Assembly (NCBI GenBank): GCA_965655095.1 | Contig: OZ296654.1 | Span: 76,880,001-76,944,000 of the forward strand | Direction of reading: 5' to 3' | Source of the DNA: Haplodiscus bocki | Taxonomy: Eukaryota | Length of the DNA stretch: 64,000 bases | Shown here: piece after piece, positions 1,697-63,762 of the stretch | How positions within the stretch are numbered: the stretch's first letter is position 1 | Layout: each line of letters begins with the position of its first letter | Program-made: the position numbers and the translations under genes | Notes under the pieces: generated by a model | What the model was told of the DNA's origin: nothing | What the model saw: only the letters and a program-made list of their open reading frames with translations | Database searches by the model: none

Positions 1697-1793
1697 CACA
1701 CATTCGAGGTACTATCCATGAGTTTTCTAATGCATAGCCTAATTGTTGACAAACTTATTAAATAGCTTCGGCTGTTTAATAAGTCAACTTCAG
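1697..1793 (+). other. Structured 5' leader, copy 1 (spliced-leader-like)
   Basis: Two hairpins: an imperfect stem at about 1707-1740, and a 14-bp stem (1753-1766 with 1771-1784) closed by a C(UUCG)G loop. Ends in CTTCAG 8 nt before the ORF1 ATG. Shared with 59472-59529 and 59853-59899. Confidence 0.75.
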
Positions 1794-1801
1794 ATCTTTC
1801 G

Positions 1802-2614
1802 ATGCCTCCAAAACGAGCAAAAGCGAGTGTCTCTGATGACAAAGCAAAACACTCAAGATGTGGCCAATGTGAGAAGGAAATAGCAGAGCACGTGGATCCT
1901 TGTATCATGTGCGATGAATGCAGCAGATGGTTCCATGGCGCCTGCGTGTCTCTTTCTTCCGAGGACATCAGGGTGCTGGGGAGGATATCAAACTGCCGCT
2001 GGTTCTGCGATTCTTGTCTTCCACAGACGAAAACAGTCGAGGAACTGGCCAAACAAACTCGAAAGCTAAGTTCCATTGTCAATGACTTACAAACCTCCAT
2101 TACGAAAATTCCGCCTATCGAACTGTCCGATAAAAAAGGAATACAAAATGTAGAAAAGGTATCTCCATCAAAAAAGATTGATGAATACCAATACGAGGTC
2201 CGAGTAAGTGGGATTCCAGAAAACAATGAAGCAAGTCGAATCAAACGTCAGTTCAAAGATAAAGAAGAAGTTGAGAACGTCTGCTCGTCAATCGGATGTA
2301 CATATCCGATTAAAGAATGCAGACGCATTGGGAAATTTGTTGATGGCAGAACCAGAAAACTGCTCGTTACCTTTAATTCTGTCTGGGATGCCAGAGCGCT
2401 GGTAGCAAAGGCTTCTGAAAAGGATTTGTACAAAAACTCACGTGTTCTAATCACGCCTGGCCTGTCAGAGGCAGACGTGAGAAAAGAACAAGTAGTATTG
2501 AAAAATCGATGGGAGTTAATGAATTCTGTAATAAGGAAAGAAGACCTTCGGATACACAAGTTCAGGCTTTACCAATCCACGTCTTCAGGCGAGATAGAGG
2601 TGAAGCTTGATTGA
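1802..2614 (+). CDS. LINE A ORF1: PHD finger, coiled coil and L1/CR1-type C-terminal domain
   Basis: Open 270-aa frame with CGQC...CIMCDECSRWFHGAC...WFCDSC (C4HC3 PHD), then VSGIPE and RRIGK...RKLLVTF motifs typical of CR1/L2 ORF1. Confidence 0.9.
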   Translation: MPPKRAKASVSDDKAKHSRCGQCEKEIAEHVDPCIMCDECSRWFHGACVSLSSEDIRVLGRISNCRWFCDSCLPQTKTVEELAKQTRKLSSIVNDLQTSITKIPPIELSDKKGIQNVEKVSPSKKIDEYQYEVRVSGIPENNEASRIKRQFKDKEEVENVCSSIGCTYPIKECRRIGKFVDGRTRKLLVTFNSVWDARALVAKASEKDLYKNSRVLITPGLSEADVRKEQVVLKNRWELMNSVIRKEDLRIHKFRLYQSTSSGEIEVKLD

Positions 2615-5432
2615 CAACCAACTCTCTGCAAATTATCATTGAAACTATTTTACCCAAATTCGCAAGGCCTTCTATCTCTTGAAAGACGACTGAAAGTTCT
2701 CAATAAATTTTTGTTGAGTACTTGTAGCTACCTGTTCGTTACTGAAACATGGTTCGATAGTCAAACAAGTTCAGTGGTTTTCCCCAACAACACTCCAGCT
2801 CAAATTTGCCGTTCCGATAGAAGCTTGGGAATACATGGTGGTACAGCAGTGTTTGGGTGGGATCCCAGCAAGTCTACTACGTTAACATCTCAGTTCGACT
2901 GTGGTTGCTCTACGGTAATTGAAGGTATTCTAAACTTGCTGATATACAACCCGCCAATTAGCAGTGAATACCGGATCTCTGATAACCGGCTAATGAATTT
3001 CATACAAGAATCTCTTCGGCAATACTCCTGGTCAACTGACGACAAAATATTTCTGATTGGCGACTTCAATTTTCCTGGATTTGATTGGTCATCTTTACCA
3101 TTCAATGATATTCCCAATTATCCTATTTTATCCTCCTTTCTATTGACAAACGGCTTTAACCAATATGTGGACATTGTTACTAACAAGTCTGGGAATACCC
3201 TGGACGTTTTTCTTTGTAACTTTCAAGTTTGTGTCTCCATCGAATCAGAGTTTTGTGACCACTCTGATCATGCTTTGCTACACTTCACACTCTCAACACA
3301 ACATTTACTCCCGGTCGATGGTATGATGCGTAATTCCAGAAGTAGGCTCGTCCTGAATCCAGAGAGGCTTGAGTATTTGAAACTCGATCTTTCAACCAGT
3401 GTTTTTTCTTTTCAAGATGCAACAGCTGATCTTTTCTATTCACAGAAATGGTTTCGGAATTTGCATCAGATATTGCTGGTTTATATGAAAAAGAAAAAAT
3501 TATATCGCCAGTCTTTACCAAATTATTTCTCGTCACATACGACTCACCTAATGAATTGCTTTTAACCCCGATGCGAAGGGAGTTTGTCAAATCGAAGTAC
3601 CTCGTGATTAAGAGAAATCTTTTGCAGTCAATTGAACTGGACACACAACTGTTCTTCGAAAACTTCCTCAAATTCAATACCAAAATGAACGATATTTTCA
3701 AACTTATCGAATCTCTTCGGATGGAAGATCAGTTCCCCAATGAAATGTTTCATAACAAAAACCAGTTTATTGGACCTTTGGAAATTGCGCAGGAATTCAA
3801 TACTTTCTTCATAAGTCAGTTCACACCATGCGATGGACAATACGGAGACTTCCATCCTTCTGTTCTGAACGAAATTGAATTCTCACTTGAAGAAGTCATT
3901 GAAACGCTTCTTCAAACAAGTGATGGTATGGGTTCTGACAACATGTCAGGCGCAACCATTCGGACAATTGCAACTCCATTGAGTGTACATTTTCTTGGCT
4001 TGGCAAGAAGTATCTTGGAAACTGCGAAATATCCTGATAACTGGAAATTGGTTGATGTAAAACCTCTGCATAAAAAACGAGCAAAGAACATTATATCCAA
4101 TTATCGGCCTGTTGCCAATCTCTCCAGGCTATCATTGAGCTTTGAGAAGCTTCTTTTCAAGCACCTATATAAATATATTGCACCGAAAATAAACTCTTCT
4201 CAGCATGGATTTATGAAGAACCGCTCAATAACTAGTCAACTGCTATTGCATTTAAAGTTACTACACGACTCTCTTGACATAGGCGAAGAAGTTTTTACAC
4301 AATATCTCGATTTCTGCAAGGCTTTCGATAAAGTGAATCATTACCTGCTAATTGAAAAATTAAAAAATTTCGGCAATGGTGGGAAACTTTTGCAACTTCT
4401 ATCATCCTATCTAGAAGATCGATCTCAGCGGACGGTAATAAATAACGTCTATTCCGAGTATTTGCCTATAAACAGTGGAGTTCCACAGGGTTCTGTGCTT
4501 GGGCCTCTGCTGTTTTTTGTTTTTATTAATGACCTTCCGGATGTGCTTGAAACCTCTATTGCTTATCTCTTTGCCGATGACACCAAAATTAACACTACAG
4601 ATCCAGCCTTGCTTCAGAATGATCTTCTTAGACTACATCAATGGTCCTTGGAAAAAAAATGCAGTTCAATTTCATCAAAACAAGTTTAATATGGTTCACA
4701 CTGAAGAGAAAGGACATTTAAGAACAACCTGTATGTGTTTTTGGCGGATAAAACATTTCTTTTACTCGAAAGCCAGTTGTTGATTTGGGAATAGGTTTTT
4801 GTTATAATCTGTCCTGGACTGAGCATATCAAGTCGAAAGTTTGTAAAGCTCATGGTAGATTCATCTCCATCGAACGAAACTTGCCAAACAATCTATCCAC
4901 CAGTCAGAAAGCTTCAGTATATGTTCTTTATTTAAGGCCCTTGATTTTATATGGAACCACTGTCTGGTTCGCAAACAGAACTAATTTGGAAAAGTGGGAA
5001 AGCAGAGTCACGCGTTGGATAACTTCATATGACACGTATAAAGAGCGTCTTATTCAAAGCAACATTCTGCCACTGTCTCTTCTGTTTCAGTTAGAGGATC
5101 TACTAACCTTCAACAAGGTTCTGAATGGAAAGCTTGGCCCTGAAGTTCGGTCCCTGATAGAGCCTTCTAAAGCACCTCAACAAAACCTCCGCGAAACTAG
5201 TTTTCTTCCTTTCAAACTCCAAAAAACAAAACTGAAACTGACAGATTCTAATTTCATCCATCGAGCAACGAGACTTGCGAACTTCGTTTCAATGAAACAC
5301 AATATAAATTTCTATGATCCATGTGAAAAAGTCAAACCCCCTTTCAAATCTCTTTTTTGGAATTATTTCCTTAATTCCTACGAAAGGAAATCATGTGCTT
5401 CTTTCATTCAATGCTATTGCTGTCATCTGTAA
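2615..5432 (+). pseudogene. LINE A ORF2: APE endonuclease plus reverse transcriptase, frameshifted
   Basis: TETW, HGG, YNPP, GDFNFP, GNTLD, SDH (APE); NYRPV, QHGF, YLDFCKAFD, GVPQGSVLGP, FADD (RT); Cys-rich C-terminus. Frame breaks near 3555, 4655 and 4750-4785. Confidence 0.92.

Positions 5433-5487: not shown

Positions 5488-5547
<60 letters not shown>
5488..5547 (+). repeat. (AGT)20 microsatellite forming the LINE A 3' tail
   Basis: 20 perfect AGT units directly after the 3' UTR. Confidence 0.97.
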
Positions 5548-53400: not shown

Positions 53401-56299
53401 CTCGAAATCTTCATCCAGAGTTACACTAATTTCCTGCAAAGAAGCAAAACATGCAACTGTATTCTAACCAACCAATGAAATTCCGCACTGTCTAGTATAG
53501 ACTTCTTGTAGCAGTGCTAACCATGAGATCACTAGCTGGCTTCAGAAATCGGCTCATCAACGAAATTATGTCTTGCCGCTTCACAAACTAAAACAGACAC
53601 TTCTCAACAATTGCCAAAATAACAATGAAATATAGAAAGCGGGCATTACAGTCGGCCTTTTTTTAAGTGCCCGACCAATGAAGTGATTTTCCTTGTGATT
53701 TTCAAAGGCTTCTTTAATGATTTCTGCCAAAATTCTGCGCTTGCTTAAACTTTACATACAATGCTGAGTTTTCGACAGAATTAAAAGGTTGGAACTAACT
53801 TTTAGGTCTATCAGCATTCCCTGACATCCGAGTCTGCCTGAGCACCAAAGAGAGAACACGTGTTCGCTCTCCTTCATCAACACAGGCGAGTACTTGTCAC
53901 TTGTGACTGTGGCCACTTCCTTGGCGGTTCCGTCGTCTCCCACCACCGAAAAATTGCGTTCCAAAGTACCGCGCGTTGCTTCCAACCTAACAAATCAAAG
54001 CCTGTTAATAATCCCTTTTCTACTCTTGCCCAAAAGCGTCAAATGTGGAGTGAAGCTTAGTTTCCACCCCATACAAGGCGATAAATTGATGTCCTTCCAT
54101 TGTGAGGCGGGAATGAAAAGCTTCAACGGGGAGAATTTGAGACAAAAGGAAAGGCTTCCAAGTAACATCTGCCGCACTAACCATGCAGAAGCGAGTTTTT
54201 GGTTTTTCTGTCTGCCGTAGATGAAATTGAGCGCATAGGAAACAAGTCCGATGAGGAGAAGGAACTCTAGGTAGAACCCGTCCCATTTAGTCCTCAGGTG
54301 TTCTGGCACGTCAATCACTTTAAGGCCGTCAACTCCTCCTGCCCCTCCAGACCCTCTCTTAGTCGTCTGTCTTTGATGACCAGTTCCTCCTTTGCCTTCG
54401 AGTCCTCCCACACCACCAAGCGCCTCCATTGAAGGTATGGAAGAGTCACGCTGAAGCAAAATGAACAATTCAGTCATTTTTGTTTTGCAATGACCCGTTT
54501 CGTCATACTAAGGTGCACCTATGTACGAATTGTTTTAGGTAAATCAACAAACCATCCCACAGACTGGAGTAACTTGAGTTTTGCCTCGAAATAATTTCTA
54601 TCACAAGCGAATCCACTTTTGCTCAAAATTTCCGCTATTTTGCAAATAAATCCACATAAATTTTCAATTTCTTTGTTTTAATCATTCTATCAACTCTTCC
54701 ATTCAACATATCTTCTTGCTCCACATCCATCATGTTGACGCAAAAAATCATCTCCACCCCGATGATTTCCTATCAAAGCTCAGCTAGCTAATTGACAAAA
54801 TTTCAGGTGGGCGCTTTATGAAATGAAGATGTAGTCGGTGTTTTCTGAATTAAAGATGCCGACTATTACAGTTTCGTTTTTATCGTAAGACATTTCTCTC
54901 ACTTCGAATCGATCCAATTTTAAAACTTTGGTCAATTCTAATTCTTGATGGGAAGAATTGTACCATAGCTTCCAAAACTTCAAAAATCGAAAAAAGTTCG
55001 TGATAGCTGCATTTGCCTATGCTGAAAATTTTGGGAAAAGCACAAACGAAAACATTTTGTAATAAACCAGTTTTGCAAAAAACGGGACATTTTCGAAAAG
55101 CAAACGCCAAAAAAATTGCAATACCCCTTAGTTTCTCCTCGATTATCCGTCAATTCTGCCAGCATGCTTTTCGCCTGAAGTAAATAACCGCCAAAATCGA
55201 TTATACGCCAAATCGGCAAACAATGTTTTTCACGTTTCCTGTTGAAAATAAGACAATCGAAATCAAGTACACTTCCAGTCAACCAACGCCCTCCTTTTTC
55301 CCAGCCAAAAATTGCTGCACCAATGCTTCCGGAAAATCGAGGATTACTATACTTCTCTGTGGTACACAAAGTTTTCTCGAAAAAGAACTTCAAAACAACC
55401 ACCTCCACCATAACTATTTTGAGTCTCACGGATGGTGCCGATTCGGACAATACTTGGCTTGTTACTGTTTACAGAACTAACCTCTTCTTCGACAATAAGG
55501 ACATCGTCGTCTTCATCGGCTTCCTCATCGAATGTTTTGAAATCTTGCATCTCCTCTGCACCTTTGCCTGATTTCACGGAGGAGTGAGCTTGGCCCTGAT
55601 TACCTGAGTCTGCCACCGACTTCAAAGGTCGCTCTCCCATATCTAATGTTTCCTCATCTTCATCAGCATGATGCAGAGAATCCATTAGTACTGCACCTGC
55701 AACAAAAGCAGCGATAAAACCTGAATGAAATTCAATTCCATTTCCTAAACTCAACAATTAATCGCCACTGTTCACATACCGCCAAGCCGTTTGCATCATC
55801 AGAGTCAAACAAATTTTCATGTCATCTCCAGTGGAAAAACGAGAAACTTAGGCTCCAACGCGACAGAGCCTTTGTTTGTTCAGAAACTTATTCCAATACA
55901 TCTGTTCTTTCCAAATGCTCTTTACTTTATCTTCCATTTTGATTTTGGACAAACGTCTTATGGCGATCAAAACAAAAATCGAATGTTCTGACGAAGACTT
56001 CAAGATTAAACTTCCCAAAGCTTAAAAGCATATTTTATAAAGCAGCTTGCATGCCAACCTGGAGACCCTTTATGATGATGCTGGTGGTGGATGGAGGAAG
56101 CCACCCCATCATCAAACTCGTCATCGAACTCGGCAAAATCGTCTTCCACTGAGGTTGCCACAGAGGGAGCAATTCTTCCACTCTTACCATGACTGCTCTG
56201 CTCACTGTGACTGTGCTGGTAGCTGTTCTGGTGCATCTGACCGATAGAGGTCAGCAAGAAAAAGGTACAAGTGATGGCGGTCACAGACAAAATACCCAT
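47416..56299 (-). CDS. CCDC47: CCDC47 (PAT complex subunit / calumin), 10 coding exons, about 582 aa
   Basis: Exons 56299-56059, 55696-55482 (alternative in-frame acceptors at 55720 and 55690), 54450-54182, 53986-53800, 53587-53522, 53433-53335, 53025-52921, 52363-52037, 51448-51281 and 47487-47416. All introns are GT-AG, phases are consistent, total 1749 nt. Signal peptide, acidic lumenal region, TM helix, [45 protein letters not shown] and a C-terminal coiled coil. The start ATG could be slightly further upstream in the same frame. Confidence 0.93.
49080..49905 (+). repeat. Dispersed repeat, copy 2 (inside CCDC47 intron 9)
   Basis: Colinear similarity with 44200-45000. Confidence 0.85.
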
Positions 56300-57974
56300 T
56301 TTTATTCTGAAGCATTTCCGAAAGAGAATTCCTCTGAAGCAAGTATTAAGACCCATATCAGTCGACAACGAATTATTGAACTCTTGGAATTTAGTGCTGG
56401 CGGTATAGTAGGTCATACAACAGCAAAACTGATCATGTCGAAGTATCCAATCATACTTCCTCAATACCAATCGAGTCACATTGAGATGGCAAAACTGTGA
56501 GATGAATACAGTAAATGAAAAATTTAGACTTCTTTCGATCACTCACATGATAGAAGATAAGTATAAACCGAGGTCCTACGGACAATGTAAACTAATGAGG
56601 ACAAAAGTATCACACGACTGCAATAGAAAGGCTTCCCAAATACGTATGCAAATTTTTTTTTCTGAAAAAGATGTTTTTTTTAGAAAATGATTTTTTTTCA
56701 AAATCGGTAAAAGTGGCAAATTTCCTCTAGAATGCGTACCAAAGGACACTTTTTTAAATGTCTCTTTTTACACCTAAATTGAGGTTTTGCATAAAATCAC
56801 GAAATTTTTTAATTTCAAAAATTTGATTCCAAAAAATAAAACTTCCATCCTAAATAGCTTTCTAAACATAGTTGGAGGGCAGAAAATATCCCGATGGTAG
56901 CCGGGTGACTTGTTTTGAAAATTTTACAAATATTTTTTAACTTATGAGCACTACAGTAATCAACCTTTCCTCAGCGACGGATTTGCTTGACAGAGGAAAT
57001 TTTTCCATTATCGAGTTCTGAAATGCAGCTTCTTTGAAATACAACGAACTCATTTGCGATGAAGAAGTTTAGGGTGTTCACGCCAGAAGTGATCGGCAAA
57101 CTCCCGGAATCATTCCGCTTTTCATTTTAGGGAACAACAACCGTAAGTCGAACCACAAATATCAGATGAACTCTCAAAATTTGCCCTAAAAATCAAAAAA
57201 TGGATAATTTGATATTTTTCAATTTTTTTATTCCGTTTGATTTAGTTACTAATTCATGTCCAATTTCATAATAATTCAGGGTTTTTTTGCACAAATCAGA
57301 AAAACTTTAACTTTAGAAAACAATTCTCATAATCTGGACTTATTTTGGTCGATTGTGAAGTTTTCGTCATTTTTTCGCCTTTCATGTCTGGTTTTTCTGT
57401 TGGGATGGCTGGTTCAGTCGCTTGATGGCAACTTCTTGGTCACTTGCATCGTAGTTTGCCCGGATGGGGGCTGGGAGTGCTCTATTCAGTGGGGTCTCCT
57501 CCAAGGTCAATTTCCGTGCGCCCAGCACGGTCGATCTCCGTGGCAGAGTCAAAAATGGATTATCTCAAAAAAACTCTACCTTTCGGGAAGAAAAACAAAA
57601 TTTTGAGTACAGGTACTATATTAGATGGAATCTAGATGAAATTGAAAACTGGCGGAATAAAAATTTGAGAGCGCAATTTTTCCTTATGGTGAATTTGGCA
57701 AATTTCATGTTGAAAAACCTATGTTGGATGAATAATTTCCCTTCCTTATATGAAATACGGGAGGAAAATGACACAGAGGCGAAGCTGTGCTTCACAACAC
57801 TTGCGCCAACAAAATACTAGTGAACAAATCGACGAAATATAACTGATTTTTGAAAGGGCCACAATACTACTAATAACAACTGTACAGAAATTCATTAATT
57901 CTTGTACATTTATATTCAAGTAAGAAATGCTATAAATATTTCATTCGCTTGATATCTTAAAACACTCATCTCAA

Positions 57975-58150
57975 TCGACAATGACACAGTCAGTAGAGCA
58001 TGCGACTGCGGCGCGAACGGTTCCTGCTTCGAGCCAAAGGCACTCGCTCCTTTTTGGTCAAAGCTAGGAACTTGTGTCAGTTTTTTTCTCTGTTAAAGGC
58101 GACCGTGCATATCGGTATGTCAAGCAACTTATATCTGATGACTTGCAGAG
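57975..58150 (+). mobile_element. tRNA-derived SINE-like element
   Basis: CAGTCAGTAGAGCATGCGACT...GCTTCGAGCC resembles a tRNA 5' half (A box at about 57982-57993, B box at 58026-58035) without a cloverleaf or anticodon arm. The body segment 58097-58147 is repeated at 58445-58496. Confidence 0.6.
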
Positions 58151-58693
58151 ACGTAAGCTAAACTCAAAAGGTATATGATCTGCGAAAAGAGGGCAAAAGT
58201 CTAAAATGTGAAAAAGAACCTACTATGTCAAAGAGATGAATTCAAGGTTCGGGTCGTTGGTATGCTACATGCTGTACCCCTACTGTACAGTGTCATTGAA
58301 CTGTTCTCTGACCAGTTGTGAACGGATCGGAAAAAAATTGAAGACTGTATTATAACACTTGAAATCGACCAACCAAATTTAAGCAGTATACAAGCACGCA
58401 CATTTTCGAAGAAGTCAAACAACAGACGTCACATACGCTTCAATGGGGACCATGCATATCGCCGATATGTCAAGCAACTTTTGTAATGACTTCCAATAAA
58501 TGATTTCAAAATAAGTTCAAATGCAAAATTGAGTACACCCATCTAAAATCGAAAAACTTCTCGCATACAGAGAATTAATTACGTCGCATAAGGATTATTT
58601 GAAACCAATATTATAATTTTAAACTCCAACTCCCGAAGAATCAAAAGGAAACATTCAAGTAAATTCAAATTTAATGCAATCTTCATAGCTTGT

Positions 58694-58990
58694 TCATTTC
58701 TTTTTCTTTTTGCTGGCGGTAGGATCTACCTCCGTCGTTTTGGGTTGCCACTTGAGAGGATTACGTCTAAACATGGGCCATGGAGGCAGAGTCAAAACTG
58801 CGCTTACGACGAAAGCGGCCAGAACGGAGTAAACGGCAATAGAAAACCGCTGAACAATGTAGCCCCAAATGAAACCCAGCACAGCAAAAATGATGAGAAT
58901 GATTTGAAACCAGCGTTCAGCCTTCTTTTGCCCTTTGAAGTCGTAATGCGTGTCAATTTTCGGCAAAAGGGAAGCCCAAATGTCACCCAT
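58694..58990 (-). CDS. SPCS1: Signal peptidase complex subunit 1 (SPC12), 98 aa, single coding exon
   Basis: MGDIWASLLPKIDTHYDFKGQKKAE, two TM helices, LTLPPWPMFRRNPLKWQ and a KKKK end. True ATG at 58990. Confidence 0.95.
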   Translation of the reverse strand: MGDIWASLLPKIDTHYDFKGQKKAERWFQIILIIFAVLGFIWGYIVQRFSIAVYSVLAAFVVSAVLTLPPWPMFRRNPLKWQPKTTEVDPTASKKKKK

Positions 58991-58993
58991 TTT

Positions 58994-59059
58994 CTGAAAT
59001 TTCAAAAACTTCAATTCCAATTCTTCAACGAAAATTAAACCTCATTCGGTTATTTTATT
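58994..59059 (-). promoter_or_regulatory. Candidate intercistronic segment: AATAAA (59059-59054), T-rich tract, TTTCAG acceptor (58999-58994)
   Basis: The minus strand reads ...AATAAA...gtttttgaaaTTTCAG|aaaATG. The acceptor is 3 nt before the SPCS1 start. Confidence 0.55.
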
Positions 59060-59112
59060 AAAAACCCCAAATGTTGTGATAAGTTAAATAAAAAGGCTTT
59101 CACTTTACTTTT

Positions 59113-59186
59113 TCACAGGAAGGTTTCTGATCTACAGGCTGTCTGGTCTCTGTTGATCAGCTCCTTCCTTGGTCGTCCATATCTTT
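59113..59186 (-). CDS. Possible terminal exon of an unidentified upstream gene
   Basis: tttctcAG acceptor at 59188-59187, a GC-richer segment (longest frame RYGRPRKELINRDQTACRSETFL*), then AATAAA about 55 nt downstream. Reading frame not determinable. Confidence 0.35.
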
Positions 59187-59471
59187 CTGAGAAACTTGTA
59201 TGGCCCATTTCATTTCCCAGTGTTTATTCAGCGTCGTTTTGAATTACACCGCGAAAATCTGCTGCTCGGAAAACCAAATTTTGCTACCACCCTACATGAA
59301 ATTTGCTTTTCTGCTCTTCGGAAATTATTCAATTTATTCTTTTCGAAGCAAAAGTATGCTCTCCAAAAAATTATCGAATAAAAAAAATATTTTGAATTAC
59401 GTTCAGCTCCGGGTAAACGCATGGGTAAATCCCTAAATCTGTGACTACTACTTTGACAGAAAAGGAAGTGA

Positions 59472-59852
59472 AGCCTAATTGTTGTGATAAACTTACATAG
59501 CCTTGTGCTGTTTAATAAGTCAACTTCAGATAAATTGGTTTCCTGGAGAAGTGCTACTGGCTGGAGCTACTGGAACGATCTTCGCAATGAGTAGACCTGC
59601 CAAGGTTGCATCGGTGTCAGCCAGAGACGACAATGGCGAAAAAACAACTGATGAGGATCATGCAAGAGGTGTGATGAGATTGGCAAGGACTGGATGCAAT
59701 ATGATCTATGCCATGCTAGTATCACGATTTTTACTCCGGGTTACCTCTGCCACTTATATTTCAATTGTCGGAAAATACAGCTGAGTATCTCCTGTTTAAA
59801 TGTAAATCTTGCTTTGAGAAGTAGGTTATTCCTGAAACCCCTCGTAAAATTG
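59472..59852 (+). mobile_element. LINE C 5' fragment: leader copy 2 plus frameshifted PHD-finger ORF1
   Basis: Leader at 59472-59529, ATG at 59587, and SCKRCDEIGKDWMQYDLCHA / YHDFYSGL...FKCKSC forming a PHD finger across frameshifts. Interrupted by LINE B. Confidence 0.75.
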
Positions 59853-60088
59853 TTCGAGATACTACTAATTGTTGTGATAAACTTATTAAATAGCTTCAGA
59901 TAAATGAGAGCTTTTGAGTGATATCACACGTTGCCCATTGGACTACCTGCTGGACTACCCACTGCCCACTGGTCTACCCTCTGCCTCACCATCTGTTCTA
60001 TCCACTGGAGTTCTCACCAACTGGGCATCATTTTATTAATATTTAGTTACTGGTATTTTAATTTTACTTACATTCCTTTTATGCAACT

Positions 60089-60891
60089 ATGAACACCCGT
60101 TCTCGAACTGGTTCGACCTCATCTCCATGCAACCAGCAATCATGCCGGAAAGAAGTCAAGGAACGGGGAATTTTATGTGCCCGCTGTGCCAAGTGGTATC
60201 ACGATACCTGTGCTGGCCTGTCCGACGAATCATATAAGGTTAATGGTCAAATACCTGGATGTCTGTGGGTCTGTCCCCCGTGCCTGCCCGTAGCCGAGCA
60301 AATCCTTCGACAACCGCTGGTGGACCCGGAGTTTATACGAACAATTGCAGATGCCTTGAAACCTCTGCATGAGTCAGTCCAATCTCTGAATACGAAGACC
60401 GAAGTCAAGGAATCTGTTCAGGAGGCACTGGGTGAGCTTACACTTTCAACTGCCCCCCGTACTCAGTCTGACGTACGCCTTGAAGTCAGATTTGATGGAA
60501 TACCTGAACCGTCAGGTACAGGAATGCAGAATCTAACTCATGATGAGAACCAGTTGAAAAATGTGTTCCAATTTCTTGGCGAAAGCGACGCCAGTATATC
60601 ATCCGTATCTAGACTTGGGAAGGAAGTTGAAGGTCGTAGCAGGCCCAGAACATTGTGTTGGTGAAGCTTAATACAGAGTGGTCCGTCCGGAAGCTTTTGA
60701 CAAAAGCTAGGAACCTGAAGCAGTATAGTTCCCCGATATTTATGTCACGCATGCTATCGCCGGAGGATCATGAGAAAAAAAAGCTTATCCTGAAAAAGAG
60801 GCGGGAGCTTATAATTCAGGGTACTCCTGCAAAGTAGCTAAAGATCAAAAACCTAAAACTGTTCCACAACAACACTGAAGTACAACTGTGA
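60089..60891 (+). pseudogene. LINE B ORF1 (PHD finger), one frameshift and one premature stop
   Basis: CARCAKWYHDTC...WVCPPC, FDGIPE, RLGK...RPR. Frameshift near 60655, TAG at 60835, natural TGA at 60889-60891 by alignment to LINE A ORF1. Confidence 0.88.
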
Positions 60892-63762
60892 CTATCCTCC
60901 AACCATCTGAGCGTACTTCTCTACAACTGCCAATCATTGATTTCTATCCAACGCAGACTGAAACTCGCCGACTATCTAATAATCCACCAACCAGCAACAG
61001 TGTGTTTAACAGAAACGTGGCTCTCTGATTGCCACTTTGATGTGAACGTCCTTCCAAACTGTAGTTATGGGACAATATCACAGTCGATGAGGAAGTCAGG
61101 CCAACATTGAGGTGTTCTTATAGCTATAAATAACACAGTGGCGAAACGTTATGCTGAGGTGTCGATGCCGGACTGTGACTTTGCCTGTGCTACTCTCCTC
61201 AACTCCGATGCAGGCTTCTGGCTTCTAATTGCAATATACAATCCACCGCGTAATTCAAGTTACTGCTTGGAACCTAATGTTATTACCGGCTGCATAGATC
61301 ATTTCGTATCAACTGCAAGGGGTCTTAACCTCTCAGATGCCCCCATGAAACTTGTCATTGTTGGTGATTTCAACCTCCCACAAGTTAACTGGGTAACATA
61401 TCTTGGTTCAAGCGAGTACTCTCATACTATTCTCAACTATCTTGACTCACACAACCTGATTCAGAACGTAATGGAACCTACACATCGAAGCGGGAATATT
61501 CTAGATTTCGTCTTCGCCGCTGATGGTACAGCTGTAACAGTGGCCAATGTCAATCTTATCTCAGACCATTACCCAATTACCTTTGATCTCGTCCTTGAGC
61601 TTCCAATCATCAGGGGTTCGTCCTCCGTTTCTGTTTATTCCAAATCTTCCTTCAACGAACTCTGTTTTTGGTGGAATCTGTCATTTCTACACAGTTATTG
61701 CGTCTGGAGGAATCCTAATGAGATAACTGTGGGAGACTGGTATTGTCTCTTCAATTACGCCTTAATGAGTTCAATCTCTCTCAAGCGCAAACGTCGTGAA
61801 CTTCCGTATTACTATTCTTCGCACTCAGTTCATCTCCTCAACCAGCAGAGCACGATCACTAGGCATCTGCAGAGACAGTGGACATTGAGGGACGCTCTGG
61901 ATCTTAAGCGTGTTAAGCTTGATGTCACGCGCTCTATTGAATTGGATGAAACGCTGCTCCGATCCGAATTGGGCCCAACGAGTAATTGTTTCCGGTTTCT
62001 GTCAAGCAAGAATAAGCCAATGCCCTCGTGTATGAAACGGCATGACAATGTTGCGTTCTCCGATTCGGACAAAGCCGAGTTATTTAATTCGTATTTCGCT
62101 TCCGTATACAGTGATACCAGTTCCATTGACGCAGTTCACTCAGAGCCATCCAACGGGTCCTCGGGCTCTACTATTCTCCTGCAGGACGTCCCATTTTCAG
62201 TTGATCGTGTTGAGAAACTGTTGTGCAAGATTAATGATAGTTCTACGTACTCGTTTGATCTAGTCCCCCTTTTTGTTCTTCAATCCCAATCATCTAACAT
62301 TTCCACCTCTGTTTTCCCACTCTTTTGCTCCATCCTAAACTGTGCGATATGGCCTGATGTCTGGAAAACCTCTATTATAACTCCTATACATAAAAAAGGT
62401 CGAACAGATGATGTGACAACTTACAGGCCAATTGGTATTCTTCCCAATCCCAAGCTCTCCCTCGTACTCGAGCGCATCTTTTTTGACTTCATATACCCGA
62501 AAGTCCGATCGAAAATTTCCAGGTCTCAGTTCGGTTTTATGTCAAAGAAGTCGACCGTTCCTCAGCTCATAGCCTTCCTTGACAACCTATGCAAGTACTG
62601 TGACGTTAACGAACCGTGTTTTGTCGTCCTTTTTGACATTCAGAAAGCATTCGACACGGTACCGCACTCTCTCTTGATTTCGAAGCTACAGACATACGAG
62701 TTCGATCATAGCTTTCAGATGCTTTTTTCATCGTACCTAACACTCGGACAACAGATGGTCAAATCCAAGGGATGCTTGTCGAGTAAACAAACTATCGGCA
62801 GCGGTATACCCCAAGGCAGCGTGTTGGGCCCGCTGCTGTTCCTACTTTTTGTTAACGATATGCCTGATGTTGTCGTCCTTTCAAACTGTTTCTTGTTCGC
62901 CGACGACTGTAAAGTACAGGGTTCCAACCCAACTTTGGTACAAAACGACATCAACTCTCTAGTAAGCTGGTGCTTGAGGAACAACACGAGGTTTCATCCG
63001 CAGAAAACCCAAGTCCTTTGTTTTGGCAGTACGCATCAATTCCTCCTAAGCCAGAAACCAATTAAGACCGTCGCAACAATCGACGACCTAGGCATCCGTG
63101 TGAGCAGCAACCTCTCATGGAATGCACATGTAGACTGGAAGATCGGTAAGGCGTCGCGTGCTCTATTCAACATTCGCAGCTGTATACCTTTTACAACCAA
63201 CCCAGAGACGAAATTGCGCCCTATTAATTCCCTCTTCCTCCCTATTCTTCTGTAAGGATCCCAAGCATGGTGTCCTAGTATTACATCCATTCGCTCTCTC
63301 ATGACAAACCACTTCAGATGCCTAAAATGGGTTGTTGGCTCTAGCATGGATTACAAGACTTGTCTACAATGACCAAACTCTCTACCTAACTGTTATCAGC
63401 TGATTCTGAGCGACCAAACACATCTTTGGAAAATTTTTCATAATCACCTTGACATCAACTTACCAGATTATATTCAGCTGAATTCTGGCTACTCATTAGT
63501 AAACCGACATCGGCGCACCTTCATCATAAAACACTGTAAGAAGAGAAAAACTGAGGAGTCATTCTTTACTAGAGCGTCTGCACAAGCAAATTATCTTGCT
63601 CTCAGAAATGTTGACATCCCTGATCCCAGCTTCGGGACTTACCGCAAAAATTTTTTATCTTATCTTCATCTACAAGTCTCCGAAAAAGTTAACCTAATTA
63701 ATTCATGTTCATTTCACATCAACTGCTCTTGTTCATTCTGTAGAATGCGTCCACTCGCTTAG
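60892..63762 (+). pseudogene. LINE B ORF2: APE endonuclease plus RT, with in-frame stops
   Basis: YNCQSL, TETW, YNPP, GDFNLP, GNILD, SDH, YRPI, QFGF, FDIQKAFD, GIPQGSVLGP, FADD and C-terminal CSFHINCSCSFC. Stops at 61108, 63253 and 63370, all in a single frame. Confidence 0.92.

What the first reader, a model, noticed from the sequence alone, without database searches (positions are those of the whole stretch)
1697..1793. Three different LINE families begin with the same structured leader ending in CTTCAG: candidate spliced-leader-capped retrotransposons
Seen: the motif (TTCGAGRTACTA...)GCCTAATTGTTG(TG)A(T/C)AAACTTATTAAATAGCTTCGGCTGTTTAATAAGTCAACTTCAG, or a deleted or variant form, is at the 5' end of LINE A (1697-1793), LINE C (59472-59529) and LINE B (59853-59899). 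Similarity stops within a few nt of CTTCAG, and the following UTRs and PHD ORF1s are very divergent. The leader folds into two hairpins, one a 14-bp stem with a C(UUCG)G loop. No copy is followed by GT, so these are not SL RNA genes. Known: SL exons are joined to many mRNAs and leave relics in retrocopies (dinoflagellates), and NeSL, CRE and SLACS retroelements associate with SL genes. Inference: these LINE RNAs were trans-spliced to a host leader before reverse transcription. At up to about 97 nt it would be a much longer SL exon than is typical.
Basis: partly seen in the sequence, partly recalled or inferred. Interest (0 to 1): 0.9.

Follow-up and report, generated by a model that had tools for sequence, protein, structure and literature searches.

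The report
Host spliced leader copied onto LINEs
Many jumping genes (LINEs) of this acoel worm begin with the worm's own 31-letter spliced leader, which was evidently spliced onto their RNA and copied back into DNA; the rest of the reported "leader" is the LINE's own sequence, which folds back onto that leader.

Summary
The first 31-32 nt of the leader (LINE A 1736-1765, LINE C 59472-59500, LINE B 59865-59893) are letter for letter the published spliced leader (SL) of the acoel Symsagittifera roscoffensis. The genome holds about 700 SL+GT sites, including a tandem SL-RNA/5S array. So the SL exon ends at AAATAG, not at CTTCAG.

The next 28 nt (1766-1793) never precede GT. In every copy I could read they sit at the start of a LINE, so they are LINE-encoded 5'UTR. 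One arm pairs with SL nt 19-32 in a 14-bp C(UUCG)G hairpin that resembles stem-loop I of the real SL RNA. The piece 1697-1735 is specific to this copy.

At least 20 repeat families begin exactly with the SL, including PHD-ORF1/APE/RT LINEs only about 30% identical in protein. Every held LINE A copy has unique DNA upstream. One LINE A copy has the SL joined at the CTTCAG acceptor, and two loci have an SL joined onto a relic SL.

Best reading: LINE RNAs are SL trans-spliced and reverse-transcribed full length. No RNA data could be laid, because the available runs were DNA. First readers of this scan noted the same 31-nt leader on other windows of this genome.

The parts
1697..1735 (+). Copy-specific junction filler upstream of LINE A. 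It contains TTCGAGGTACTA at 1703-1714. It is not part of the shared leader.
   Evidence: Only the window copy matches query positions 1-28. The other 43 copies have unique DNA here. The 12-mer next to an SL relic occurs only twice genome-wide, both times in this window. AGTAGTAGT at 1688-1696 matches the element's tail repeat.
1736..1765 (+). Relic of the host spliced-leader exon at the 5' end of LINE A (A at -1 plus the SL). This copy has a 2-nt deletion and substitutions around 1748-1750.
   Evidence: It matches the published SL and the SL RNA gene exon. The consensus of 43 LINE A copies equals the SL exactly. 37 of 40 copies start with the same A that precedes the exon in the gene.
1766..1793 (+). 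LINE-encoded start of the 5'UTR. The stem closes with C1766-G1771 around the loop TTCG (1767-1770). The right arm GCTGTTTAATAAGT (1771-1784) pairs with 1753-1766. It is followed by the acceptor-like CAACTTCAG (1785-1793).
   Evidence: Fold of -21 kcal/mol, z = -3.7. Its 3' 16-mer is never followed by a base other than A genome-wide, so never by GT. The arm occurs 64 times, always right after the SL, behind different loops.
1802..2614 (+). LINE A ORF1 with a PHD finger.
   Evidence: Pfam PHD, E = 3.7e-06. It is 28% identical to LINE B ORF1.
2639..5432 (+). LINE A ORF2 (APE endonuclease plus reverse transcriptase). It is broken by frameshifts in this copy.
   Evidence: ORF list. Pfam Exo_endo_phos_2 and RVT_1.
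5488..5547 (+). (AGT)n microsatellite tail, the 3' end of this LINE A copy.
   Evidence: Read directly from the sequence.
59472..59500 (+). Degenerate SL relic at the 5' end of the LINE C fragment.
   Evidence: A second LINE C copy (L034) shows the same layout. The family is old, with copies 75-81% identical to the window's.
59501..59529 (+). LINE C extension: loop CCTTGTG, then the same arm and CAACTTCAG as in LINE A.
   Evidence: The hairpin is degraded in this copy (z = -0.85).
59853..59864 (+). TTCGAGATACTA, the flank just upstream of LINE B's truncated SL relic. It is not a family feature.
   Evidence: only 2 occurrences genome-wide of this 12-mer next to an SL relic.
59865..59893 (+). 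SL relic (SL nt 3-31) at the 5' end of LINE B.
   Evidence: Five other LINE B copies also have the SL 3' end joined to CTTCAGATAAATGGG.
59894..59899 (+). CTTCAG, the first 6 nt of LINE B's own 5'UTR. It equals the last 6 nt of the LINE A and LINE C extension.
60089..60664 (+). LINE B ORF1 with a PHD finger.
   Evidence: Pfam PHD, E = 1.6e-05.
61138..63255 (+). LINE B ORF2 (APE endonuclease plus reverse transcriptase).
   Evidence: Pfam RVT_1, E = 6e-28, and Exo_endo_phos_2, E = 4e-11. It is 32% identical to the LINE A RT.

Best explanation
The 59-nt 'leader' is a composite of two parts.

Part 1, about 31-32 nt ((A)GCCTAATTG...AAATAG), is the host's spliced-leader exon. RNAs of many LINE families are SL trans-spliced at an acceptor at the very start of their short 5'UTR. 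The LINE reverse transcriptase copies the RNA to its 5' end. Each full-length insertion therefore begins with the SL, set against unique flanking DNA.

Part 2, 28 nt up to CTTCAG, is encoded by the LINE (families A, C and at least one more). Its arm is complementary to SL nt 19-32. Once the SL is attached, or when a genomic copy is transcribed, a 14-bp hairpin forms with the SL/LINE junction at its top. This is the same geometry as stem-loop I of the genuine SL RNA, but without the GU donor.

Shown: the SL identity, the exact junctions, the unique flanks, the LINE origin of the extension, and the fold.

Inferred: that the SL was added by trans-splicing and not by some other route. Also inferred is that the relic SL, alone or with the hairpin, helps the next round of expression.
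For: 1. Identity with the host SL. The first 31 nt equal the published SL (PMC9911081). They also equal the exon of about 700 SL+GT sites, which include a tandem array with a 5'ss GTAAGT, a stem I, a U-rich Sm-like stretch and a linked 5S gene.
2. Exact junctions in many families. The SL is joined exactly at its exon end to at least 20 different downstream sequences. Several are PHD-ORF1/APE/RT LINEs. LINE A and LINE B share only 28-32% protein identity, so shared descent cannot explain a letter-perfect 31-mer.
3. Sharp 5' ends. All 43 LINE A copies start at SL nt 1 with unique DNA upstream. 37 of 40 start with the A that sits at -1 of the SL gene.
4. The extension is not host SL. Its 3' 16-mer is followed by A in all copies (49 copies continue AT; 0 hits with any other next base), so there is no GT-followed source. 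The arm occurs 64 times, only after the SL, behind loops CTTCGG, CAAGTCATTG or CCTTGTG.
5. Direct traces of splicing onto LINE or relic RNA. One copy has the SL joined to LINE A precisely after CTTCAG. Two loci have the SL joined after the AG at the 5' edge of a relic SL.
6. The hairpin is significant (z = -3.7) and uses the same SL nucleotides as stem I of the SL RNA.
7. Prior art shows that TE transcripts can receive the SL in Hydra (PMC12220107).
Against: 1. No RNA evidence could be obtained. The only runs found were genomic DNA contigs. That today's LINE RNAs receive a fresh SL is therefore inferred from DNA alone.
2. The hairpin buries the relic SL's AG, yet only 1 of about 50 LINE A copies was spliced at the exposed CTTCAG acceptor. 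This fits poorly with simple re-splicing of read-through transcripts. It leaves room for transcription that starts at the relic SL.
3. The tandem SL|relic junctions are rare: 2 loci.
Confidence: 0.75

Rival explanations
1. Captured once, then inherited. The SL sequence, with the hairpin in families A, C and D, is now a LINE-encoded 5' module. It acts as an internal promoter or start-site element, as the SL exon does for SL RNA gene transcription in Ascaris (from my own knowledge). On this view new copies arise from transcripts that start at the relic SL, with no ongoing trans-splicing.
For: The 5'UTR is only about 36 nt of LINE sequence, which leaves no room for a conventional upstream-of-ORF promoter. 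All copies start at the same nucleotide as the SL gene transcript. The hairpin sequesters the relic AG, and only 1 of about 50 copies used the free CTTCAG acceptor. The 22-nt arm plus CAACTTCAG is letter-identical between LINE A and LINE C while the sequence beyond it is unalignable, which suggests a functional module.
Against: At least 20 independent continuations are each joined exactly at the exon end, which requires many separate captures. Most SL-led families, LINE B included, lack the hairpin. The SL|CTTCAG-acceptor copy and the SL|relic-SL junctions show that splicing onto such RNAs does occur. SL RNA gene promoters normally need upstream elements that the LINE does not carry (own knowledge).
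Confidence: 0.17
2. SLACS/CRE/NeSL-type origin. The LINEs insert into SL RNA genes and gain SL sequence by co-transcription from the SL gene promoter.
For: Five of 43 LINE A copies have a partial SL fragment just upstream.
Against: LINE A copies are dispersed on all large contigs with unique flanks. The complete exon is present and ends exactly at the splice donor position, with no intron sequence. The endonuclease is APE-type, not restriction-like.
Confidence: 0.03
3. One reading: the whole 59-97-nt structured sequence ending in CTTCAG is an unusually long SL exon.
For: The sequence ends in AG and is shared by LINE A and LINE C.
Against: There are 0 genomic copies in which the 3' 16-mer is followed by anything but A. 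The published SL and the SL genes end at AAATAG|GT. The part 1697-1735 is unique to this copy. LINE B lacks 22 nt of the sequence.
Confidence: 0.01
4. Template switching. The LINE reverse transcriptase jumps from the 5' end of LINE RNA onto SL-bearing RNA or onto SL RNA, as in U6-L1 chimeras, and creates SL-LINE chimeras without trans-splicing.
For: Partial SL fragments lie upstream of 5 of 43 copies, and junction filler is present in the window copy. Both show untidy 5' junctions.
Against: Every family has the same exact exon-end junction. No SL RNA intron sequence is ever attached. A jump would have to begin at SL nt 31 each time.
Confidence: 0.03

Closest known systems
Dinoflagellate SL-relic retrogenes ('recycled' mRNAs; Slamovits and Keeling 2008; PMC6050394, PMC5585692, PMC12014239)
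   Same: A trans-spliced leader is copied into DNA at the 5' end of retrocopies. Rare fresh-SL-onto-relic-SL junctions occur.
   Different: There the carriers are host-gene retrocopies, and the relics are truncated because the acceptor AG lies inside DinoSL. Here the carriers are whole families of autonomous LINEs whose full-length copies all begin with the complete SL, in a bilaterian animal.
SL trans-spliced transposon transcripts in Hydra (PMC12220107)
   Same: Transposon RNAs use the host SL trans-splicing machinery. About 30% of TE Iso-Seq reads carry an SL.
   Different: That report concerns RNA. No genomic LINE copies beginning with the SL, and no SL-pairing element, are described in the passages I read.
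SL-gene-specific LINEs: SLACS, CZAR and CRE1/2 (trypanosomatids), NeSL-1 (C. elegans)
   Same: Non-LTR elements associated with SL sequence. A pile-up family of this type appears to exist in this genome (note s1-364264).
   Different: Those elements insert inside SL RNA genes, carry a restriction-like endonuclease, and gain only the part of the SL that lies upstream of the insertion site. LINE A, B and C are dispersed, APE-type, and carry the complete exon.
Pr77 hallmark of trypanosomatid L1Tc/ingi/SIDER retroposons (PMC1874656, PMC3383444)
   Same: A short 5' sequence is shared by different retroposon families.
   Different: Pr77 is element-encoded, acts as an internal promoter plus an HDV-like ribozyme, and gives unspliced transcripts. 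Here the shared part is the host SL, and no Rfam ribozyme matches.
Stem-loop I of SL RNA
   Same: The same SL nucleotides (about 18-31) are paired, and the exon end lies at the top of the stem.
   Different: In the LINE the partner strand is LINE 5'UTR. The loop is a UUCG tetraloop with no GU donor, and no Sm site or further stems follow.
CR1-like LINEs with a PHD-finger ORF1 (Kapitonov and Jurka 2003, from my own knowledge)
   Same: PHD ORF1, APE plus RT ORF2, and a microsatellite tail.
   Different: Described CR1-like elements are not known to me to begin with a host SL. Clade membership was not tested by phylogeny here.

Membership tests
SL RNA gene | The SL exon is followed directly by a GT 5' splice site | tested here: not met
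   The window copies read AAATAG|CT. True SL genes read AAATAG|GTAAGT. The 59-nt form never precedes G.
SL RNA gene | An Sm-like site and further stem-loops lie downstream; the genes form tandem arrays, often linked to 5S rRNA genes | tested here: not met
   The leader is followed 8 nt later by the ORF1 ATG. The real gene has stem I, a U-rich stretch, stem II and a 5S gene in a 1.7-2.2-kb repeat.
Retrocopy of an SL trans-spliced RNA (SL-relic retroposition) | The complete host SL lies at the extreme 5' end and is joined to the body exactly at the SL exon's 3' end | tested here: met
   The consensus of 43 LINE A copies equals the SL, and the junction lies after AAATAG. The same junction is seen in at least 20 other continuations.
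Retrocopy of an SL trans-spliced RNA (SL-relic retroposition) | Unrelated flanking DNA lies upstream of SL nt 1 at dispersed loci | tested here: met
Retrocopy of an SL trans-spliced RNA (SL-relic retroposition) | The SL-body junction exists in RNA, and the SL is added in trans | not testable with these tools
   No RNA run was found, and the runs laid were DNA. Indirect support comes from the alternative-acceptor copy and the SL|relic junctions.
SL-gene-specific LINEs (SLACS/CZAR/CRE/NeSL) | Insertion at a fixed site inside SL RNA genes | tested here: not met
   LINE A copies have unique flanks on contigs C1-C12.
SL-gene-specific LINEs (SLACS/CZAR/CRE/NeSL) | A restriction-enzyme-like endonuclease in place of APE | tested here: not met
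   Pfam Exo_endo_phos_2 (APE-type) in LINE A and LINE B ORF2.
Non-LTR retrotransposon (LINE), CR1-like | An ORF2 with APE endonuclease and reverse transcriptase | tested here: met
Non-LTR retrotransposon (LINE), CR1-like | A PHD-finger ORF1 and a microsatellite 3' tail | tested here: met
   PHD in ORF1 of LINE A and LINE B and of two further SL-led families. (AGT)n tail.
Non-LTR retrotransposon (LINE), CR1-like | Placement of the RT inside the CR1 clade in a phylogeny | not tested
   No RT tree was built. The clade name rests on domain layout only.
HDV-like ribozyme 5' processing (R2, L1Tc) | A ribozyme fold at the element's 5' end | tested here: not met
   No Rfam match at E <= 1 in 1400-2100.

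The most novel reading that the evidence does not exclude
The copied SL is not a passive scar. It is what makes these very short-UTR LINEs self-sustaining.

A genomic copy transcribed from outside would re-use its relic SL as a ready-made 3' splice site. The relic has its own AG, and a CUAAU branch-point-like motif lies about 25 nt upstream of that AG. Alternatively, the relic would act as an SL-gene-type start element. Either way, each generation would regain a capped, SL-led RNA without a conventional LINE promoter.

In families A, C and D, the LINE-encoded arm builds a mimic of SL RNA stem-loop I on the attached SL. The mimic would control which AG is used, or mark the LINE RNA among thousands of SL-capped host mRNAs for its own proteins.
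Probability: 0.3. Interest if true: 0.8.

Novelty: new variant of a known kind. Interest (0 to 1): 0.6.

Why it matters
How LINEs obtain a defined, capped 5' end and carry a promoter with them is a central problem of retrotransposon biology. Known answers are internal promoters, 5' ribozymes, and co-transcription from host genes.

This genome shows, in its DNA, that at least 20 repeat families, several of them confirmed LINEs, have their 5' end supplied by the host's trans-splicing machinery. At least three families have also evolved a sequence that base-pairs with the host leader.

That would make the acoel a natural system for three questions:
- Can SL trans-splicing replace a LINE promoter?
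- How is a parasite's RNA told apart from SL-capped host mRNAs?
- Does the LINE arm co-evolve with the SL across acoel species?

There is also a practical point. SL relics at LINE 5' ends inflate counts of 'SL trans-spliced genes' and confuse the annotation of SL RNA genes in this genome.

Tried and rejected
1. A long SL exon ending in CTTCAG is rejected. Searches for the 3' part followed by GT, or by any non-A base, found none.

2. The 5' extension 1697-1735 with TTCGAGRTACTA is rejected as part of the leader. The upstream regions of the two sites are otherwise unrelated. The combination occurs nowhere else in the genome.

3. The RNA test led nowhere. The look-up of sequencing runs returned 4 runs of unstated kind. 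Laid on 55300-61200, they behaved as genomic DNA: even 13-44x depth over unique DNA, colinear contigs, and no intron-skipping joints or SL loose ends at gene starts. Neither the host-gene test (SPCS1, CCDC47) nor LINE expression could be assessed. This says nothing about expression.

4. An origin of the extension in the SL RNA intron was considered and not supported. The intron strand of stem I (CCTATTGATAAGTTT) and the LINE arm (GCTGTTTAATAAGT) are alike only as far as both must complement the same SL segment. The loops are unrelated.

5. An Rfam scan of the leader region gave no family and no ribozyme.

6. Comparing divergence of the SL part with the body within LINE A (2.1% against 2.35%) cannot tell a refreshed SL from an inherited one, because both decay alike after insertion. 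The extension's low value (0.8%) is biased by the seed pattern used to find the copies.

I therefore did not fetch the other LINE B copies, any family D copy, the SL|ATCTTTCG copy or the SL|relic-SL loci. Only pattern counts are reported for them.

8. No RT phylogeny or homolog search was run. The clade label 'CR1-like' rests on domain layout.

Full report
**Observation.** The motif is present at all three sites. It cannot be chance: each half gives 2 window hits against 0.00-0.01 expected. A search of the window's own 1.5-Gb genome with 1697-1793 found at least 40 scored copies. All but the window copy match only from query position about 29-42 onward.

In the loci fetched, every copy begins sharply at (A)GCCTAATTG. 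The upstream DNA is unrelated, and downstream lies the same LINE, called 'LINE A' here. So the unit is about 59 nt long, not 97.

Next to an SL relic it occurs only at the two window sites in the whole genome, and the DNA around it is otherwise unrelated. The window's LINE A ends in an (AGT)n tail at 5488-5547, and AGTAGTAGT precedes position 1697. This suggests that 1697-1735 is filler at this copy's 5' junction.

**What the leader is.** The genome paper of Symsagittifera roscoffensis gives the spliced leader as GCCTAATTGTTGTGATAAACTTATTAAATAG(A) (PMC9911081). That is the first 31 nt of the leader, letter for letter.

The genome has 699 sites where this sequence is followed by GT. Most lie in a tandem array with a period of 1.7-2.2 kb. 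There the exon is preceded by A and followed by GTAAGT. Next comes a strand that pairs back onto the exon's 3' half (stem I), a U-rich stretch and a second stem. A 5S rRNA gene lies about 215 nt downstream. These are the genuine SL RNA genes. The SL exon therefore ends at AAATAG, which is 1765 in LINE A, 59500 in LINE C and 59893 in LINE B.

**The remaining 28 nt.** The stretch 1766-1793 (CTTCGG...CAACTTCAG) is not host SL. Its 3' 16-mer is followed by A in every genomic copy. Forty-nine copies continue with AT, and there are 0 hits with any other base. So no GT-followed gene or mini-exon can be its source.

The arm CTGTTTAATAA occurs 64 times directly after the SL and never in the control. 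It sits behind two main loops, CTTCGG (LINE A) and CAAGTCATTG (a further family), plus rare variants. LINE C has the loop CCTTGTG. LINE B has only CTTCAG after the SL, as a family feature seen in 6 copies.

The arm pairs with SL nt 19-32 in a 14-bp stem closed by C(UUCG)G (-21 kcal/mol, z = -3.7). The SL/LINE junction sits at the top of the stem. In stem-loop I of the real SL RNA the exon/intron junction sits in the same place, and the same SL nucleotides are paired there. A conserved arm behind variable loops argues for selection on the pairing. Covariation cannot be scored, because the left arm is fixed by the host SL.

**How widespread it is.** LINE A and LINE B both have a PHD-finger ORF1 and an APE plus RT ORF2. 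They are only 28% (ORF1) and 32% (RT) identical, so a perfect shared 31-mer cannot be inherited LINE sequence.

A census of what follows the SL's last 14 nt listed the first 100 of 610 hits. Some of those hits may be chance, because the AT-rich 14-mer's reversed control is also frequent. The list shows at least 16 recurrent continuations. At least four more begin with G. Two of these further families also encode PHD ORF1s. Another unit has a SUMO-like ORF 8 nt after the SL.

LINE A is young, at about 2% from its consensus. LINE C is old, with other copies 75-81% identical to the window's.

**Mechanism.** The simplest account has three steps. LINE RNAs are SL trans-spliced at the start of their 5'UTR. 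They are then reverse-transcribed to the very 5' end. Finally they are inserted.

Several observations support this:
- The junction lies exactly at the exon end in all families.
- The flanks upstream are unique.
- 37 of 40 copies start with the A that precedes the exon in the SL gene. That A is likely the first transcribed nucleotide (inference).
- One genomic LINE A copy has the SL joined directly to ATCTTTCGATGCC. That is at the CTTCAG| acceptor, with the 28 nt precisely removed.
- Two loci have an SL joined after the AG at the 5' edge of a relic SL. This is the signature of re-splicing a transcript that ran through an older copy.

Transposon transcripts carrying the SL are documented in Hydra (PMC12220107).

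**What remains open.** It is not settled how a new copy is expressed. LINE A has only 36 nt of its own sequence before ORF1, so it has no obvious promoter.

One possibility is that the relic SL serves as an acceptor in read-through transcripts. It has its own AG and a CUAAU motif about 25 nt upstream of that AG (inference from sequence). The other possibility is that the relic acts as a start element. The hairpin buries the relic AG, yet only about 1 in 50 copies used the free CTTCAG acceptor. That tension keeps the 'inherited 5' module or internal promoter' rival alive, at about 0.17.

Three other rivals fit poorly. The evidence against them is the dispersed unique flanks, the APE endonuclease, the complete exon without any intron, and the lack of a GT-followed source.

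**RNA evidence.** None could be obtained. The four runs found were of unstated kind, and when laid on 55300-61200 they proved to be genomic DNA contigs. The depth table does show the SL-relic bin at several hundred times single-copy depth.

**Comparison and novelty.** The closest known phenomena are:
- dinoflagellate SL-relic retrogenes;
- SL-bearing transposon transcripts in Hydra;
- SL-gene-specific LINEs (SLACS, CRE, NeSL);
- the shared Pr77 5' hallmark of trypanosomatid retroposons.

This case differs in two ways. First, whole families of dispersed, autonomous, APE-type LINEs in a bilaterian begin with the complete host SL. Second, some of them encode a partner strand for the SL.

Two full-text searches of the held library and the S. 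roscoffensis genome paper gave no report of this. I rate it a new variant of a known kind.

First readers of this scan noted the same 31-32-nt leader on LINEs in other windows of this genome. One follow-up described a LINE pile-up in SL sequences. Those notes are not independent evidence.

**Limits.** After no further loci could be cut from the genome. The other LINE B copies, family D and the three special loci are therefore known only from pattern matches. The species name is inferred, not given by the tools.

Noticed in passing
L003, L010, L023, L039, L042 (the 40 nt upstream of the LINE A start): Five of 43 LINE A copies have a 10-13-nt exact fragment of the SL (different parts of it) just upstream of the complete SL. 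None of 43 control windows does. Possible causes are insertion into older SL relics or template jumps at the 5' junction.
   Followed up: partly
window 1703-1714 and 59853-59864: The 12-mer TTCGAGRTACTA lies just upstream of an SL relic at both sites, 58 kb apart, and this combination occurs nowhere else in the genome. The surrounding DNA is unrelated. Unexplained.
   Followed up: partly
L081:1732-1800 (SL RNA repeat on contig C9 at about 72.47 Mb): A 5S rRNA gene (Rfam RF00001, 58.5 bits) starts about 215 nt downstream of the SL exon in the SL RNA tandem repeat. This is the classical SL-5S linkage, here in an acoel.
   Followed up: partly
L072-L079 (contig C7 at about 57.9 Mb, repeat period about 9.5 kb): A tandemly repeated unit starts with the SL, then 8 nt, then a 105-aa SUMO-like ORF (Rad60-SLD, E = 3.5e-10, ending ..QQSGG). 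No poly(A) follows, and the sequence runs into an ORF resembling a retroelement C-terminus. It may be a captured or retrocopied host SUMO mRNA.
   Followed up: partly
L064-L067 (contig C2 at about 147.4 Mb, period about 15.6 kb): Head-to-tail units in which a 17-nt partial SL (CTAATTGTTGTGATAAA) directly precedes a complete SL that leads a PHD-ORF1 LINE.
   Followed up: partly
genome-wide census: Many SL-led families have an acceptor-like YTTCAG (TTTCAG, CTTCAG, TCTTTTCAG) within about 10 nt after the SL. This resembles the CTTCAG of LINE A, B and C. Its role is unknown.
   Followed up: no
window 56679-56875 and 57664-58450: Very high-copy repeats lie between the two host genes. DNA depth there is hundreds to thousands of times single copy, with many internal 'skip' joints typical of variable tandem or dispersed repeats.
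   Followed up: no
window 2614-2640: LINE A ORF1 (which ends at 2614) and the first ORF2 piece (from 2639) lie close together. ORF2 in this copy is split by frameshifts at about 3450-3565 and about 4690-4785.
   Followed up: no
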